Assembly: GCA_021613535.1 (NCBI GenBank)
Contig: CP075492.1
Span: 12,710,001-12,774,000 of the forward strand
Length of the DNA: 64,000 nt
Direction of reading: 5' to 3'
Source of the DNA: Adineta vaga
Lineage: Eukaryota > Animalia > Rotifera
Below, in pieces: positions 11,494 through 19,084 of this stretch. The notes under the pieces were generated by a model. That model did not search any database. It saw only the letters and a program-made list of their open reading frames with translations, and was not told where the DNA came from. Position numbers and translations under genes: made by a program. Position 1 is the first letter of the stretch; the number at the start of each line of letters is the position of its first letter.

Positions 11494-12194
11494 TTAGTGT
11501 GGAATACCAAACATTGAAAAAACAATACGTGTAACAAAAGGAGCTAAACGTACAATAACTGAACATTCAAAAATGCCAAAGAAAATGCCTGCGATTACAT
11601 CAGAAACATAATGTCGTCCTAATATGACTCGTGAGACAACAACAAGACTCAACCAAATGACAATAATTGGAGATGGAATACGTTTGAAAAAGGATGTTTG
11701 AATAAAGTAGAAAAGAAGAAAAACTGCTCGAGATGTATGACCACTCGGAAAAGAAAATTTATCAGGTCCAATTGATAGAACATCATCATGATTAACAATT
11801 GGTCGTGATCGACGTGTTAAACCTTTCGCTGTTCCAATGATAGCAATATCAAACATGAGACCGGTAAATAATAAAATGAAGTGCATTGCTTCATGTATAG
11901 AGGTATAATGTAGTGCGATCATAATAATTGAATACGGTATCCAAACATAACCTGAACCGGAAAATTCCAAAGCAATTGCAAATTTTCGAAAAGATATATA
12001 CGCTGAATCTAATCGAGCACATATGGCCCAACGAAGTGAGATTTCATGATCGTAGGAATTAAGTTGTTTCAACATCTGAAAAATGTTATGAAGAATAAAC
12101 CCATATAATATTGACATTTATTTAATTTAACAAAAGCAGTTGAAAGAAAAGATAGTAATCTGGAAGCTAGACCTTTTTTTGTTGTTGCAATCAT
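11494..12194 (-). CDS. PLPP6: PAP2-family polyisoprenoid diphosphate phosphatase (PLPP6-like); alternative start at 12075
   Basis: KGLTRRSRP, DKFSFPSGHTSRA, SRVILGRHYVSD motifs; putative 56-nt intron 12076-12131. Confidence 0.85.
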
Positions 12195-12264: not shown

Positions 12265-15200
12265 TCAGACATTTTTATCACTCTCCTCTTTAGTTATAGT
12301 TTGTGATGATGGTGATGATATTAAAGCAGTTGTATAATTAGCAGTTGATGCCGAAGTATTGTTATTATTATTAGTATTCGTACAACAAGGTGTTGGACAA
12401 CGTGATGATAAGAAATTTTGATGTTGACCACTAGTAGCAGCAAAATCACAATGATCTAACATTTTTAATAAATCAGCTGCAGATGGACCACCATGATGAT
12501 GATGAGAAGATGATGAAATAGAGTTTAATTCAGTATTTGAACAAAGTTCAATCGCAGTTGTCAAATCAAATAGTTGAATAGAGCCTTTGAAGAAAAAGTT
12601 GGCATCAATTTTTATTTCTTCGAAAGTATTGAAACAAACCATTGTCATGACCAGTGAAAATAAATCGACGAGGACGTGTACTTAATCGTGATGGTCCTTC
12701 ACATTCATGAATTGTAAAACAACTGATTGGTGAACTATCTACCGAACGAACAACAGCAACTCGTTTACCTTAACAGATAAGAAAATAAAACGTGATATTT
12801 AAAAGGCGAAAATAATACCTGTTGAACAAAATCTGACATAGATTTGATTTGTTTCAAATGGAACTACTTTTTGAACAAAAACTTGTTGATCATCACGATC
12901 ACCATATGGTCCTAAATAAAGTTTATATATTTTTCCGAAACATTATTTCAGTTCTTCGTTCATACCAATGTCCTAAAATAGAAGAAATAGAGAATATAAT
13001 ACAAAAAGAATACTATTTTACTTACATTGCCAGCAGTATAACTAGTGATTGATCGCGCTGGTTCTAGTGATACAATACGATAGGAAGAAAGTGGAGTAGA
13101 TCCTATAGAAAAATTCATAGTGAGAAGTAAGAAAAATTTATATTATCAAACCTGGTTGTGTGGAAATCATGCCACGAAAACGAGTAACATTCCATGTACG
13201 AACATGATTATTCGATGCACATACACTTAAACAAAAATAAATGTTTGATTTAAACAGTATAAGAGAATAAACTTACCTGATTAAGTGTCGTTCGGAAAGC
13301 ATAATCTTCAAGAGAAAAATGATTGTAAGCATAGATTTGTTTCGTATCATCTTACCTTTGTGACTGGACTGCGATGAACACAGAATGTTTGGAATAATTG
13401 AGGGCTAAATATAAATCAGTATTAACAAACAAGTAACAGGCCATTCTATGTAAAGAATTTTAAGAGAAGATCAATACATTTTTTTCTTGAAAGTCTCTGA
13501 TCTTTGATTATCATAAGTCGCATTTGAAAGGGGAATCTACTAAATGATATCTATGCAAATCAATAATCGAACTTTAATTACCCATGACCAACAGTTTCTG
13601 GATGTTGTACTACAATTCGAATAATACCAGAACTTGTTCCATACGCTATTTCAATCCTAATCAACAAAAAGAAAAATATATATCGTCATTTTACATATTT
13701 CGTTCATCTTATTACCAATTGCCAGTTACACTTGTCTTCGGTGTTAAATAAACACTCAATGCAGTAATAGATTCACCAGCTGGATCTCTGTATTAGGAGA
13801 ACAAAATTATTCCTTTCAATCATAATACGAAAAATGTTTACTTGAATATTTCAGTAATTAATAAATCATTATCTTTCATTCTTAAAGGAAATTTTTGCAT
13901 ATCAAAATAATAAATTGATCCTGTTTCACTACCAAGTAATAGAAATGTTCCAGCCTAGAATATTCAAAATTTCCTCTTCCATTCATTTGATCATTCCCAA
14001 TGATGATGAAAAGAAAATACTTACAGTATCAAAACTTAATATTCGTGTTAATTCTTGTGTTTGCCATTGTTGAGAAAGTGAATGCCATACGCCAACTTTT
14101 CTTTCGTCACCTGTTGCGACTAATTGTGAATTAATAAAAAATAAATTGTCAACTGGTCCACCAAATGCAAATGTGCCAATAAGTGTATGAATTGATGCAT
14201 CAACAATATTCCAAAGTCGAACATTTGTTCGAACAACAATAGCTAAGAGTTTCGATTCTCGAAGATTGAAATTGGTTTCTGGTGATTGTTGATTAGCTGC
14301 TGCTGCAGCTGCTGTTGATGATGATGAACGAGATGTTATCGCTAAACGATAAATATCATCGGATTGAACTTCCGATTCAAACATTAGTTGCCAACCACTT
14401 GTATCTTTCATTTTATAACACATGACAACTAAAGAAGCAAATTAGACATTTCTTTGTAGAATAAAGATTCGTTTTTTTTTGTCGTTCGTACCATTGTTTG
14501 AATAAGCAGCACTAATCCAGTTATGATGTCCAGCAAGAAGAATAACACTTGCTGCGGAAGAATTTGATATGGGAGGATGATTATCGATAAAAGCACCAGT
14601 TGATTTCTGACGTAAATGAGATGAAGACGGATTTGATTGATGAGTTGCCCAAAGAACAGAATCAGTTGAAGATGCACGTGAATGTCCACGACTTACGCTT
14701 GGTGCCGATGGAATTGCAGAACTAAAGTCTGTTGTTGATGATGCTCTGCAAAACAAATGAAATAACTAGCTAGCTAACAATAATCCTATTGGATTATAAA
14801 TATTACCGAAAATCACCAATTTGTGATGCACTACGATTCAATGTTTGTAGCATCATATTATTTAATCGTAATGCTGAACCCGGTCGAACAAGGTTTGTTG
14901 GTTGACAGATCGGTGGTTGATATACAATTGCTTGTGGTAATGGAACTTGTGTTGATTCAAATGAAATTGGCGTATTCACTGAATGTGGAGGATTAATATA
15001 TCCATTAAAAAGTACATCGCCACATTGACTATGTTCAAGATCTTCACATAATTGTAAACGACGAATTAATGGTTGAACGCCATAGAATTCACATTCATGT
15101 TTTAACATATGAAGATCACAACCATTGATATCTAAATAAATGGATCAAATCGTAGAGAAGAAAATAATTCAATCTTACCAAGTTCTTTTGTTCGTAGATA

Positions 15201-15395
15201 ATTTAAAATAATTGAAAATAATTTCGGATCACGATCGATAAAAATTGCTCCTTGTTCATCTCGATTTGTTGATATGAGACCATTGAGCATAGCAGTAAAA
15301 AACGAATCCGATATCCATGTTAATGTTTGTCGACTGGTAGAAAAACGTTGACCACCAACATTTAAATTAATAATATCTGCTGTTTGATGTGGCAT
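12265..15395 (-). CDS. KCTD3: KCTD3/SHKBP1 BTB-WD40 protein
   Basis: [21 protein letters not shown]...[10 protein letters not shown]; [66 protein letters not shown]. Confidence 0.92.
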
Positions 15396-15450: not shown

Positions 15451-16552
15451 TTAATAATTATTAATTAATGATAACCATTCTTCATTCGCTTCTGAACATT
15501 CGTTTGTCTCATTTTCATTTATACGAAATTGAAATGGTTCATAACCTAAGAGAATAGATCGATCATTTAACCATGAAAATAATCCTGTTCCTGCAAATTC
15601 TGCTAATGGATTAACTTCACAAATATAAACTTGATATTTATTGCTCGAATTCTCAACTAAAATCAAGTCTAAAACACAATTTTCATACGGAATTCGTTCA
15701 AGAAGATTTTCTATTCTGAAGAAATTGTCAATCGTTTCTAAAATCAATGTCTTCTGTTCGATTAAAACTCTATCTACGATATATTCATTATATTGAGTGA
15801 GAGCAGTGAATTTACGTTTGTGAATAAAGGCACGAAATTCACTTTTTAAATGTCGTCGATCGAGAAGAAATTCACGGAGAATCAAATTTAACGATAAAGA
15901 TGATTTAAGATCATCTTGAATACGTTCACTTGCGAGAAGAAGTTGAACTGCGTGGAAACCATCATGAATAGCAAGAATACGAATAGTTGCTTCATCAAGC
16001 GCAATTAGTTTTTGATTCCGTTCTAGAATGAATGAATTCAATATTAAATTGTAGAGAAAACATTAGTAACATACCAGATGTATTATCAGATTTTAATGTG
16101 TTTAATACTTGTTGAAATAGTTGTTTGAATTTATTTCTATTCAATAATAAAACTGCATCTTTTGGACTTCTTGTTGATAAACGTACAAACATCGGTCGTT
16201 TTATATCACATTTATCGATTGTATTAGCTAATTCTAATAAATCAGGATATTTCTGAAAACATTCTTTTGTTTTTTCATCATCATCATCATCATTAGTAGT
16301 AGTAGTAGATGAAAGACTCTTAAAGAATTCATGACCATTTCGAAGTGCAATGATTTGATTTTCATTCATTGATACAATTGTTGATGGAAATGTCCACTGT
16401 TTGATAGAGTCATAATAACGTTCGAATTGTGTTTCATCCATCATTTTTCGATATGTTTCACTATCAGGACATAGAAGTTGTTCTTGAATTTTTTCTTTTG
16501 GTTTATTCGTTGAACGTAATCGAACGGATTTCAATTGATCAGCCAAAGACAT
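15451..16552 (-). CDS. Cdc123-like (R2K clade) ATP-grasp protein with N-terminal WH2-like motif
   Basis: FVRLSTRSPKDA, SERIQDDL, EFRAFIH..FTALTQY, ICEVNP..GTGLFSW; one intron 16023-16074. Confidence 0.8.
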
Positions 16553-16558
16553 TTTTAT

Positions 16559-18170
16559 CTAAAAAAAATTAGATAGTACAAGACAAGAATTCGTGCCACC
16601 AAAGCCAAAAGAATTCTTTAAAGCAAGACGTTTTTTACTATTCCATGATGATGATTGATCTTCAGAAATAATACTTATCGATGGTGAATCTTCTGAAGTA
16701 TCTTCGTTATTTTTATAATTTAATGTTGATGGACATCGAGCATGATAGCAAGCAAGAATAGTAAAAAGTGATTCGAGTGCACCAGCAGCACCAAGTAAAT
16801 GACCAGTATGACCTTTCGTACTTGAAACTAAAACATTGTTACTAGTCGATTGAAATAATTGTGAAATCATTTGACGTTCAATACGATCACCAATTGGAGT
16901 TCTATAACAAACAATAGGAGAATACGAAAATGTGAGAATATTTAATTTGCAAGTAACTAATAGTAGTATAATTGAAGAACGGATGTTTTCTAGGATACTG
17001 TAATGATTTGTGAATATTTCCTGTTATCTTACTCATATGCAAAGTCTGATCATATCATACTTACGACGTAGCATGAGCATTGACATAACCAATATCTTTT
17101 GCATTTACACCAGCATTATTCAAAGCATTTTTCATACAATTCAATGCGCCTATTCCACTTGGATTTGTAATATGACTTGCATCTGAACTTAGACCATATC
17201 CAAGTATTTCACCAAAAATCTTCGCTCCTCGTTTTTCAGCACATTCCAATCGTTCCAAAACAAGAATTGCAGCTCCTTCACCCATGACAAAACCATCTCG
17301 TTTTTGACTACATCAAATCCTCGAACTTTTCGAAAAAAAACAATAGAACTTCAAATTAACTTACGCAAATGGTCGCGATGCTAGTTTTGGTTGTTCGTTG
17401 AATGATGTAGAAAGCGCACGCATTCTCGCAAAACCTGAAATCGATATTGGATTGATTGTTGCTTCAGTACCACCACTGACCATAGCATCAGCATGACCCA
17501 ATCGAATCATATTATAGGCATCACCAATAGCTTGAACACCTGCTGCACACGCTGAACTATTGCAAAGCTAGAAACGAAAATTATTTCATACCTATTTGCA
17601 CGAAAGAACTTACATTAGGTCCTTGTAATTTATTTCGAATTGAAACATGTCCTGCAGATGAATTTGGTAAAACTTGTGTAATATAAAATGGACTCATGCC
17701 ACGATATGTTCCTTTTGTTTTCATTTGTTCCCACATTGAACATGTATTTGCTAAACCAGCCATACCATTTCCAATAGAAACACCAATTCGCGTTCGATCA
17801 TTTGCATCATTAAGTATCTAGAAACTATTTCGTCGATATTTTTCCAAAACAAAACAGAAATATTTACTTGACTTTGTTCAAGTGCTTCTTGTGCAGCAAT
17901 AATCGCAAATGCACTCGCTATTGACATTGATTTCAAATCTGACATACGTGTAAAATATTTTGAAAAATTCAGTGCACCAACTTCATCTTCATTATCTGAA
18001 CTTAATGGAACTCGACCAGCGACTTGACAAGGAATTCCTGCATATTCTTCTCCATTAAGTGAGGTAATACCTGATTCATTATTTAATAAACGTCGCCAGT
18101 TGAATTCTACACCAACTCCTAATGGTGATACAGCACCTAAACCAGTAATTACCACTCGACTAATACTCAT
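16559..18170 (-). CDS. OXSM: 3-oxoacyl-ACP synthase (FabF/OXSM, mitochondrial FAS II type)
   Basis: [21 protein letters not shown] catalytic Cys, [30 protein letters not shown]; multi-exon. Confidence 0.92.
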
Positions 18171-18232
18171 ATATCTAAAAATATTATGAAAAATTTTGAA
18201 AAAGAACAACAAGTTATCATTATCTGACGAAA

Positions 18233-19084
18233 TCATTTCGAGATATTAGTAGGACGATGATCACACCACGGTGTTAAGTTATAGTTACATTCAATATTTA
18301 CATCTAACATATTATATTCCACTCCGGTTTTAGTCTTTTGAATTGTTTTATTAATTATAGTATATTTAGTTGTGTTAAATCCCATTTCGGGATAGATTTT
18401 TCTACCAGCTACTTTCTGTTGACCATATTTGGCATAATCACGTTTATGTACATGTTTATCATGAATATGAGTAAATGTATTGGAAGAATTTGTCGATAAG
18501 TTATATGGACGATAAATTTTCATTCCGGCAAGTTTCATTCGAGCATATAAATTGTCATCTTCTCTACCCCAACCCCAATATAACGGTGACATACCATTGA
18601 CACGTTCAAAATCTTTACATGTAATCATTAAAATTCCACCAACATAAGTCGAATAATTATACAATGGATGATATTTTGGTGATGCTAAATGTACAGGACC
18701 TTTTTCAGGATAATCATATCGTAATTCTCGATAATTCAATGGAAGAAGATCGATATCATGCATAACAATATAATCAACAACTGTTCGAGATTCAATAAAA
18801 CCAATATTAATCAAAGCAGCTCGATTAAATCGATGTGTATCACTTTGATTAATAATCATAAATATATGATCAATAGCTTGTACATGAAGATATGCATTCA
18901 TATGAGGTAAAAATTGTTCTAATTCACTTGAACGGTTTCGAAATGGAACAATAACAGCTAATCGATGTTTCGGTATGGTATTTGTTTCATTCGTTTCTAT
19001 TTTTGATGAATACCAAAATGAGATGAGAAAGAATAATACACAATAAAGAATACCAATTCGAATTACAACACGAATTTTGAACAT
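18233..19084 (-). CDS. B4GALT7: xylosylprotein beta-1,4-galactosyltransferase 7
   Basis: type II TM, HRLAVIVPFR, FNRAALINIG, MHDIDLLP, YWGWGREDD, C..NLTPWC; intronless. Confidence 0.93.
   Translation of the reverse strand: MFKIRVVIRIGILYCVLFFLISFWYSSKIETNETNTIPKHRLAVIVPFRNRSSELEQFLPHMNAYLHVQAIDHIFMIINQSDTHRFNRAALINIGFIESRTVVDYIVMHDIDLLPLNYRELRYDYPEKGPVHLASPKYHPLYNYSTYVGGILMITCKDFERVNGMSPLYWGWGREDDNLYARMKLAGMKIYRPYNLSTNSSNTFTHIHDKHVHKRDYAKYGQQKVAGRKIYPEMGFNTTKYTIINKTIQKTKTGVEYNMLDVNIECNYNLTPWCDHRPTNISK

What the first reader, a model, noticed from the sequence alone, without database searches (positions are those of the whole stretch)
16548..16576. OXSM stop codon doubles as the splice acceptor of the next gene
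The minus strand reads CTA TCT AAT TTT TTT TAG ATAAAA ATG. The last OXSM codons (S-N-F-F-stop) form a CTAAT, a U-tract and an AG, 6 nt before the Cdc123-like ATG. Trans-splicing here would consume the OXSM end, so each precursor would give one mRNA or the other, like C. elegans SL1-type operons. This is coding sequence apparently under dual constraint.
Basis: partly seen in the sequence, partly recalled or inferred. Interest (0 to 1): 0.8.

Follow-up and report, generated by a model that had tools for sequence, protein, structure and literature searches.

The report
Stop codon doubles as trans-splice acceptor
In bdelloid rotifers the stop codon of a mitochondrial fatty-acid synthesis gene (OXSM) is also, most likely, the site where the next gene's messenger is cut out and given a spliced leader, and 16 of 16 rotifer sequences keep this overlap, so it is a sharp natural test of how gapless animal operons are processed.

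Summary
Observation confirmed. In what is most likely Adineta vaga, OXSM ends S-N-F-F-TAG (16561-16559), 6 nt before the ATG of a D123-domain gene (a paralogue, probably not CDC123 itself), inside a conserved B4GALT7>OXSM>D123>KCTD3>PAP2 cluster. All 16 bdelloid haplotypes keep TTY-TAG|AT with the ATG 6-8 nt later; neighbouring genes use TAG once in 41. CTAAT is not conserved. In one RNA assembly the D123 contig stops matching exactly at the A of this AG and carries 7 foreign letters (not displayed), as leader splicing predicts; two other assemblies read through. The 'one mRNA or the other' claim is not shown: the cut falls after the G, so the upstream RNA keeps its whole ORF and stop, and there is no conserved AATAAA. 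Best reading: a Ciona-type gapless junction giving an OXSM mRNA with no 3'UTR (about 0.5); either-or use with a downstream 3' end is the main rival (0.3). The OXSM poly(A) site was not observed. The scan noted the same stop-equals-acceptor layout at other A. vaga loci; I confirmed one at sequence level. The searched papers report no rotifer operons.

The parts
18233..19084 (-). B4GALT7-like galactosyltransferase, single exon, first gene of the cluster; no acceptor before its ATG; divergent from a TFIIS gene
   Evidence: Pfam GT7 N and C; upstream sequences in 11 lineages; synteny
18175..18180 (-). Acceptor of OXSM (TTTTAG|AT), 4 nt before the OXSM ATG at 18170
   Evidence: Conserved YAG|AT in 11 lineages; one RNA contig (X15 record 6) ends exactly at 18176, the A of the AG
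16559..18170 (-). OXSM (mitochondrial 3-oxoacyl-ACP synthase), 5 exons 18170-17868, 17817-17614, 17567-17365, 17307-17065, 16901-16559; 431 codons by exon lengths; no second copy found in the genome
   Evidence: Introns seen in RNA contigs, Pfam, PDB, genome search, exon arithmetic
16559..16570 (-). Dual-use site AAT TTT TTT TAG: last OXSM codons N-F-F-stop and pyrimidine tract plus AG (16560-16559) of the D123-gene acceptor
   Evidence: X15 record 5 stops matching at 16560 with 7 foreign letters; allele T>G at 16565 gives N-L-F-stop
16553..16558 (-). 6-nt leader between acceptor and D123 ATG; first two letters AT invariant, length 6-8 nt in other lineages (frame not kept)
15451..16552 (-). 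D123-domain (CDC123-like ATP-grasp) gene, 349 codons, intron 16074-16023
   Evidence: Pfam D123, intron in RNA contigs, orthologues, other D123-domain genes in the genome
16502..16507 (-). AATAAA inside the D123 ORF, 51 nt after the OXSM stop; possible OXSM poly(A) signal in this species only, not conserved
   Evidence: absent at this place in the other 13 haplotypes; none at all within -80..+300 in L012, L019, L020, L024
15427..15432 (-). Acceptor of the KCTD3/SHKBP1-like gene (TTTCAG|ATG), followed by a conserved 2-4 codon upstream ORF
   Evidence: 12 lineages
12265..15395 (-). KCTD3/SHKBP1-like BTB gene, fourth gene of the cluster
   Evidence: Pfam BTB_2; annotated 744-aa orthologue in A. 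ricciae
11494..12077 (-). PAP2-family phosphatase behind a TTTCAG|ATG acceptor (12077-12076); AATAAA within 25 nt after its stop in 9/9 lineages (11477-11472 here)

Best explanation
The five genes are transcribed as one precursor from a promoter upstream of B4GALT7 (inferred). The rotifer 23-nt spliced leader is joined after the G at 16559 and caps the D123-gene mRNA (strongly indicated, leader letters not displayed). The acceptor's pyrimidine tract, AG and branch adenosine lie in the last codons and stop codon of OXSM (sequence shown; the branch position is inferred: the only invariant As are the two Asn codons at -11/-12 and -32/-33). Because the cut is 3' of the G, the upstream RNA keeps the whole OXSM ORF and UAG; it is most likely debranched and polyadenylated at or within 2 nt of that G, as described for Ciona operons, giving an OXSM mRNA with no 3'UTR (inferred, not observed). 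A 1-2 nt shorter end is harmless because poly(A) then completes UAA. Some precursor stays unresolved, which explains the read-through contigs. The double role fixes the protein tail at S-N-[FLIS]-F-stop.
For: Invariant TTY-TAG|AT in 16/16 haplotypes, 0 changes over tree length 4.05 against about 3.2 expected from neighbouring stops (P about 0.04) and 4-6 changes of the two letters after the other stops. 28/28 complete bdelloid OXSM tails have fixed length and end N-x-F, 89 non-bdelloid tails vary from 8 to 16 residues. The unrelated Lines-like gene ends in the same N-L-F-TAG|AT before YPEL5. All other internal junctions carry YAG|AT, the first gene none. 42 SL RNA gene copies in this genome, exon ending AG before a GT donor. 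X15 record 5 matches to 16560 and then has 7 unmatched letters: the leader shares exactly those two letters, none of the four OXSM donors shares any. X15 record 6 ends on the A of OXSM's own acceptor. In X15 the OXSM contig stops at 16640 and no contig bridges the junction. No conserved poly(A) signal near the OXSM stop, while PAP2 has one in 9/9; 16/18 Ciona operons also lack it.
Against: No poly(A) site was observed. X2 and X14 contigs run unbroken from spliced OXSM exons into the spliced D123 gene, so read-through RNA exists and could be the working OXSM mRNA. The 7 letters are not shown. Contigs drop short pieces at allele forks, so the X15 gap proves little; my reading of contig ends rests on general knowledge of de Bruijn assembly. 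Debranch-then-polyadenylate has been proposed but not shown even in Ciona. Extra synonymous constraint near the site is weak (3/5 vs 3/14 invariant two-fold codons). Co-transcription of all five genes is not shown.
Confidence: 0.5

Rival explanations
1. Either-or use: the acceptor is real, but the piece released upstream is degraded like an outron. OXSM is made only from precursors that skip this acceptor and end further down, either inside the D123 ORF or at the D123 gene's own 3' end, with the D123 sequence serving as a 1.1-kb 3'UTR.
For: Unbroken OXSM-D123 contigs in two studies; in X14 this is the only one of three junctions bridged. An AATAAA lies 51 nt after the stop in A. vaga. Needs no debranching step. 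Competition is described for C. elegans SL1-type operons and discussed for Ciona.
Against: The AATAAA is not conserved. In X15 the D123 contig begins with foreign letters and has no genomic continuation although an OXSM contig of similar depth lies 80 nt upstream, which is not expected if most OXSM RNA ran through.
Confidence: 0.3
2. The D123 gene has its own promoter inside OXSM; its outron overlaps OXSM coding sequence and is replaced by the leader at this AG, independent of the upstream transcript (hybrid arrangement).
For: Compatible with all conservation data and with the X15 contig end; the last OXSM intron is unusually long here (163 nt).
Against: That intron is 47-68 nt in the nine other lineages; no non-coding room elsewhere; the same acceptor pattern at every internal junction points to one unit.
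Confidence: 0.08
3. A stable two-gene mRNA is translated by termination-reinitiation or stop read-through; the acceptor look is incidental.
For: Stop and start only 6 nt apart and in frame in A. vaga; read-through contigs.
Against: Spacer is 6, 7 or 8 nt among lineages, so no fusion frame is kept; invariant pyrimidine tract and AG|AT are not needed for reinitiation; foreign letters at the AG in X15.
Confidence: 0.06
4. The AG is an ordinary cis-splice acceptor joined to an upstream donor, or the conserved tail is only a protein requirement and the overlap is coincidence.
For: TAG is the common cis acceptor in bdelloids (41/50); one weak AG|GT lies at 16813; S-N-F occurs in a few invertebrate OXSM tails.
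Against: No joint to 16558 in any run; none of the four OXSM donors ends in AG; frame not kept; a protein requirement cannot fix the stop triplet or the two letters after it.
Confidence: 0.06

Closest known systems
Ciona intestinalis operons without intercistronic DNA (Satou et al. 2006, PMC1488885; 2008, PMC2760879)
   Same: One leader type, unrelated housekeeping genes head to tail, acceptor inside the upstream transcript, mostly no AATAAA, unresolved two-gene RNAs detectable.
   Different: Here the acceptor has moved up to the stop codon itself, so tract and branch point lie in coding sequence and the predicted upstream mRNA has no 3'UTR. The words 'stop codon' do not occur in the 2006 paper and the 2008 paper does not mention such an overlap. 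The poly(A) site here is not mapped.
C. elegans / C. briggsae SL1-type operons (Williams et al. 1999, as cited in PMC1488885, PMC9258526, PMC12582326; the paper itself was not held)
   Same: No intercistronic region, ordinary leader used, possible competition between the two mRNAs.
   Different: Characterised cases carry AATAAA just upstream of the acceptor and have a 3'UTR; here neither is present in conserved form, and rotifers have no known SL1/SL2 split.
Rotifer SL trans-splicing (Pouchkina-Stantcheva and Tunnacliffe 2005, leader sequence from PMC3795323)
   Same: Same 23-nt leader, 42 gene copies found in this genome.
   Different: Operons and polycistronic mRNAs were stated as not reported for rotifers in 2021 (PMC7986045); two further searches found no such report.
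Mitochondrial mRNAs whose stop codon is completed by polyadenylation (own knowledge)
   Same: A 1-2 nt shorter 3' end would get UAA from the poly(A) tail.
   Different: Nuclear, spliceosomal context; the full UAG is encoded; analogy only.

Membership tests
SL-resolved operon (any type) | Closely spaced same-strand genes, order conserved | tested here: met
   Gaps of 62, 6, 55 and 189 nt; same order in about 12 lineages
SL-resolved operon (any type) | Organism has SL RNA genes | tested here: met
   42 copies, exon followed by GT donor
SL-resolved operon (any type) | Downstream gene receives the leader at the acceptor | tested here: inconclusive
   X15 contig stops matching at the A of the AG with 7 foreign letters that the tool does not display; fits the leader, not OXSM donors
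SL-resolved operon (any type) | RNA crossing the gene boundary | tested here: inconclusive
   Contigs of two studies cross 16559 with long arms, but a contig is not a single molecule and the runs are not on record as RNA, although they lack the introns
SL-resolved operon (any type) | Single promoter, no internal start | not testable with these tools
   No capped-end or chromatin data
Ciona-type gapless operon | Upstream poly(A) added at the G of the acceptor AG | not testable with these tools
   Only assembled contigs were available; no poly(A) end shown
Ciona-type gapless operon | No canonical poly(A) signal within 40 nt upstream of the boundary | tested here: met
   None between -60 and 0 in 14 haplotypes
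C. elegans SL1-type operon | AATAAA a few bases upstream of the trans-splice site | tested here: not met
   feature taken
C. elegans SL1-type operon | Competition between 3' end formation and trans-splicing | not testable with these tools
   Needs mutation or single-molecule data
CDC123 orthologue | Best and full-length D123 match of the genome | tested here: not met
   A multi-exon gene on C5 matches the D123 model far better and over more of its length; this gene matches positions 143-254 only
OXSM | Ketoacyl-synthase N and C domains, closest to mitochondrial KAS | tested here: met
   (exon by exon)

The most novel reading that the evidence does not exclude
Trans-splicing itself makes the 3' end of a nuclear animal mRNA exactly at its stop codon: the OXSM mRNA has no 3'UTR, carries the branch point inside its ORF, and is debranched and polyadenylated, so one precursor yields both messengers; bdelloids use this at several loci.
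Probability: 0.4. Interest if true: 0.82.

Novelty: new variant of a known kind. Interest (0 to 1): 0.62.

Why it matters
How the upstream mRNA of a gapless operon gets its 3' end has been open since the Ciona work of 2006: by the trans-splicing cut plus debranching, or by a separate cleavage that excludes the downstream mRNA. At this junction the two models cannot blur: cleavage 3 or 4 nt before the G removes the stop codon of the only OXSM copy found, and cleavage after it destroys the next gene's start. One 3'-end mapping therefore decides the question. It would also document operons in rotifers, a nuclear mRNA without 3'UTR, and a protein tail shaped by a splice signal across a whole class of animals.

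Tried and rejected
Stop read-through or fusion protein: rejected, spacer 6/7/8 nt breaks the frame. CTAAT as conserved branch motif: rejected. A micro-exon between 16901 and 17071: rejected, the six letters are an allelic end of exon 4. Contig ends at 18235 and 15399: most simply allele forks, not processing sites. Conserved poly(A) signal in the D123 ORF: not found. Search for RNA-derived orthologue contigs that would show the leader or a poly(A) end: all retrieved loci whose DNA I examined were genomic. No raw-read RNA run was offered. Synonymous-site test: weak. Genome-wide motif scan: of 30 of 46 hits examined only 2 end a long ORF in frame (this site and Lines-YPEL5), so the layout is uncommon but not unique; the motif is narrow, so this is no census. 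Williams 1999 and Huang 2001 were not held. Spliced models were searched exon by exon by reference; the joined step was left out, and a natural intron-less orthologue returned by the tools (P0016) stood in for the full-length D123 protein. The large protein search was not used.

Full report
Source. The genome has 100.8 Mb in 6 contigs, 31% GC and introns of about 50 nt; the closest named orthologue is from Adineta ricciae. I take it to be the bdelloid rotifer Adineta vaga (own knowledge of that assembly).

The observation. On the minus strand the OXSM frame ends [13 protein letters not shown]-stop, with TAG at 16561-16559, then ATAAAA and an ATG at 16552 that opens a long frame. The OXSM exons carry the two ketoacyl-synthase domains, the last exon is closest to human mitochondrial ketoacyl synthase and ends one residue later than it, four introns are seen in RNA contigs, and no second copy was found in the genome. 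So the TAG is the real stop. The downstream gene has one intron (16074-16023) and a partial D123 match. It is one of several D123-domain genes; a multi-exon gene on C5 fits the model much better and is probably CDC123 proper. Relatives outside bdelloids are about 40% identical and include protists.

The cluster. B4GALT7, OXSM, the D123 gene, a KCTD3/SHKBP1-like gene and a PAP2 phosphatase lie head to tail with gaps of 62, 6, 55 and 189 nt, and keep this order in A. ricciae and in about ten unnamed bdelloid lineages. Each internal gene starts behind a pyrimidine tract and YAG|AT; the first gene has no such site. PAP2 has AATAAA within 25 nt of its stop in 9/9 lineages; OXSM, the D123 gene and KCTD3 have no conserved signal. 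The genome holds 42 copies of the published rotifer leader (PMC3795323), and the two copies read are followed by a GT donor.

Conservation of the junction. All 16 haplotypes (25-52% GC, down to 58% DNA identity) read TCN AAT NTN TTY TAG AT, with the D123 ATG 6, 7 or 8 nt after the stop. The other four genes use TAG once in 41 cases. On a tree of these haplotypes the OXSM stop never changes (length 4.05), while the neighbours show 9 changes over 11.5 (P of no change about 0.04); the two letters after the stop never change for OXSM and change 4-6 times for each neighbour. Those two letters code for nothing and match the AG|AT of the other acceptors. At protein level 28 of 28 complete bdelloid OXSM tails have the same length and end S-N-[FLIS]-F, while 89 non-bdelloid tails run 8-16 residues with varied ends; the caveat is that bdelloids are one clade. 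An A. vaga allele changes the penultimate F to L (16565), as between species. Against a matrix from 50 bdelloid intron acceptors the site ranks in the top 0.7% of the window's AGs, and orthologues in the top 0.8-3%. CTAAT is particular to A. vaga; the invariant adenosines are those of the two Asn codons at -11/-12 and -32/-33, and in the two GC-rich lineages the pair at -11/-12 holds the only As between -31 and -3. Synonymous constraint beyond this is weak.

RNA. Only assembled contigs were available. In run X15 the D123 contig matches up to 16560, the A of the AG, and then has 7 letters that do not match; the OXSM contig of the same run begins exactly at 18176, the A of OXSM's own acceptor. 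The leader ends in AG, so a leader-joined RNA shares just these two letters with the genome; none of the four OXSM donors shares any. The tool does not print the 7 letters, so their identity is inferred. In X15 nothing bridges 16561-16639. In X2 and X14, from other studies, one contig runs from spliced OXSM exons through the TAG into the spliced D123 gene. A contig is not a molecule, but RNA crossing the boundary exists. No poly(A) end was shown.

How it most likely works. A leader is spliced on after G16559 (strongly indicated). It need not: the cut leaves the complete ORF and UAG on the upstream piece, with a 2'-5' branch in its last codons. In Ciona operons the G of the acceptor AG is the residue that receives poly(A) in 41/55 cDNAs, most lack AATAAA, and the authors left open whether trans-splicing makes that end or whether the two mRNAs exclude each other (PMC1488885). 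This junction lacks a conserved poly(A) signal on either side, and the X15 pattern suggests that most OXSM RNA there does not run through. I therefore favour an OXSM mRNA ending at its stop codon with no 3'UTR (0.5). Ends 1-2 nt short would still get UAA from the tail; ends 3, 4 or 6 nt short would lose the in-frame stop. The main rival (0.3) is either-or use, with OXSM translated from RNA that skips the acceptor and ends inside or after the D123 gene; the read-through contigs and the species-specific AATAAA at 16507-16502 fit it. An internal promoter (0.08), reinitiation or read-through (0.06) and cis-splicing or coincidence (0.06) fit less well.

Comparison and novelty. It works like a Ciona-type gapless operon junction; membership is not proven because the poly(A) site and the single promoter were not testable. 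It fails the AATAAA feature of C. elegans SL1-type operons. A 2021 paper states that operons have not been reported in rotifers (PMC7986045), and my searches found no later report and no report of a stop codon serving as leader acceptor; the library is incomplete. The scan has noted the same layout on other DNA of this genome (ANKRD54, NUDT22, Lines, GTPBP10). I checked one: the Lines-like ORF (324 open codons) ends N-L-F-TAG|AT two letters before the YPEL5 start, the same motif in an unrelated protein. In a narrow motif scan only 2 of 30 hits end a long frame, so the layout is uncommon. The Ciona comparison was prompted by earlier scan notes and then checked in the paper; their RNA claims were not checked and are not counted as support.

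Limits. Spliced models were searched exon by exon by reference; the joined step was left out. Reasoning about contig ends rests on general knowledge of graph assembly. Verdict: real, conserved, a new variant of a known kind; interest 0.62.

Noticed in passing
window 15426-15418 (minus): The KCTD3-like acceptor is followed at once by a tiny upstream ORF (ATG TTT TAA here; 2-4 codons in all 12 lineages), 12-30 nt before the main ATG; it would sit right behind the leader.
   Followed up: partly
G000 C1:2551160-2551336, C5:9884356-9925969 and others: Many of the 42 SL RNA gene copies stand as divergent head-to-head pairs about 154 nt apart.
   Followed up: no
window 18228-18221 (minus): A GTCAGATA motif 45-60 nt upstream of the OXSM acceptor is kept in 7 lineages, in one of them inside the B4GALT7 ORF; possibly a second AG|AT acceptor or a 3'-end signal.
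   Followed up: no
window 9223-9207 and 8890-8884 (minus); L019, L020: The run continues: chitinase, CENP-X and a CXXC1/CFP1-like gene start behind YAG|ATG sites; in two GC-rich lineages CENP-X follows PAP2 directly, without the chitinase.
   Followed up: partly
window 16565 and 18234: Allelic differences in RNA contigs: F to L in the penultimate OXSM codon, and TGA to TAA for the B4GALT7 stop.
   Followed up: partly
L012, L024: The D123-gene intron is absent in two lineages that are not sisters on the tree; other single intron losses occur in OXSM and KCTD3.
   Followed up: no
G000 C5:4291402, C1:12235032, C2:14868478, C3:14820466, C5:4198960: At least five further D123-domain genes with long open frames besides the probable CDC123; relatives of the window's gene outside bdelloids include protists, so a foreign origin is possible but was not tested.
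   Followed up: no
G000 C3:6807743-6819808: A 7164-codon open frame with at least four ketoacyl-synthase domains, apparently a large intron-less modular polyketide synthase.
   Followed up: no
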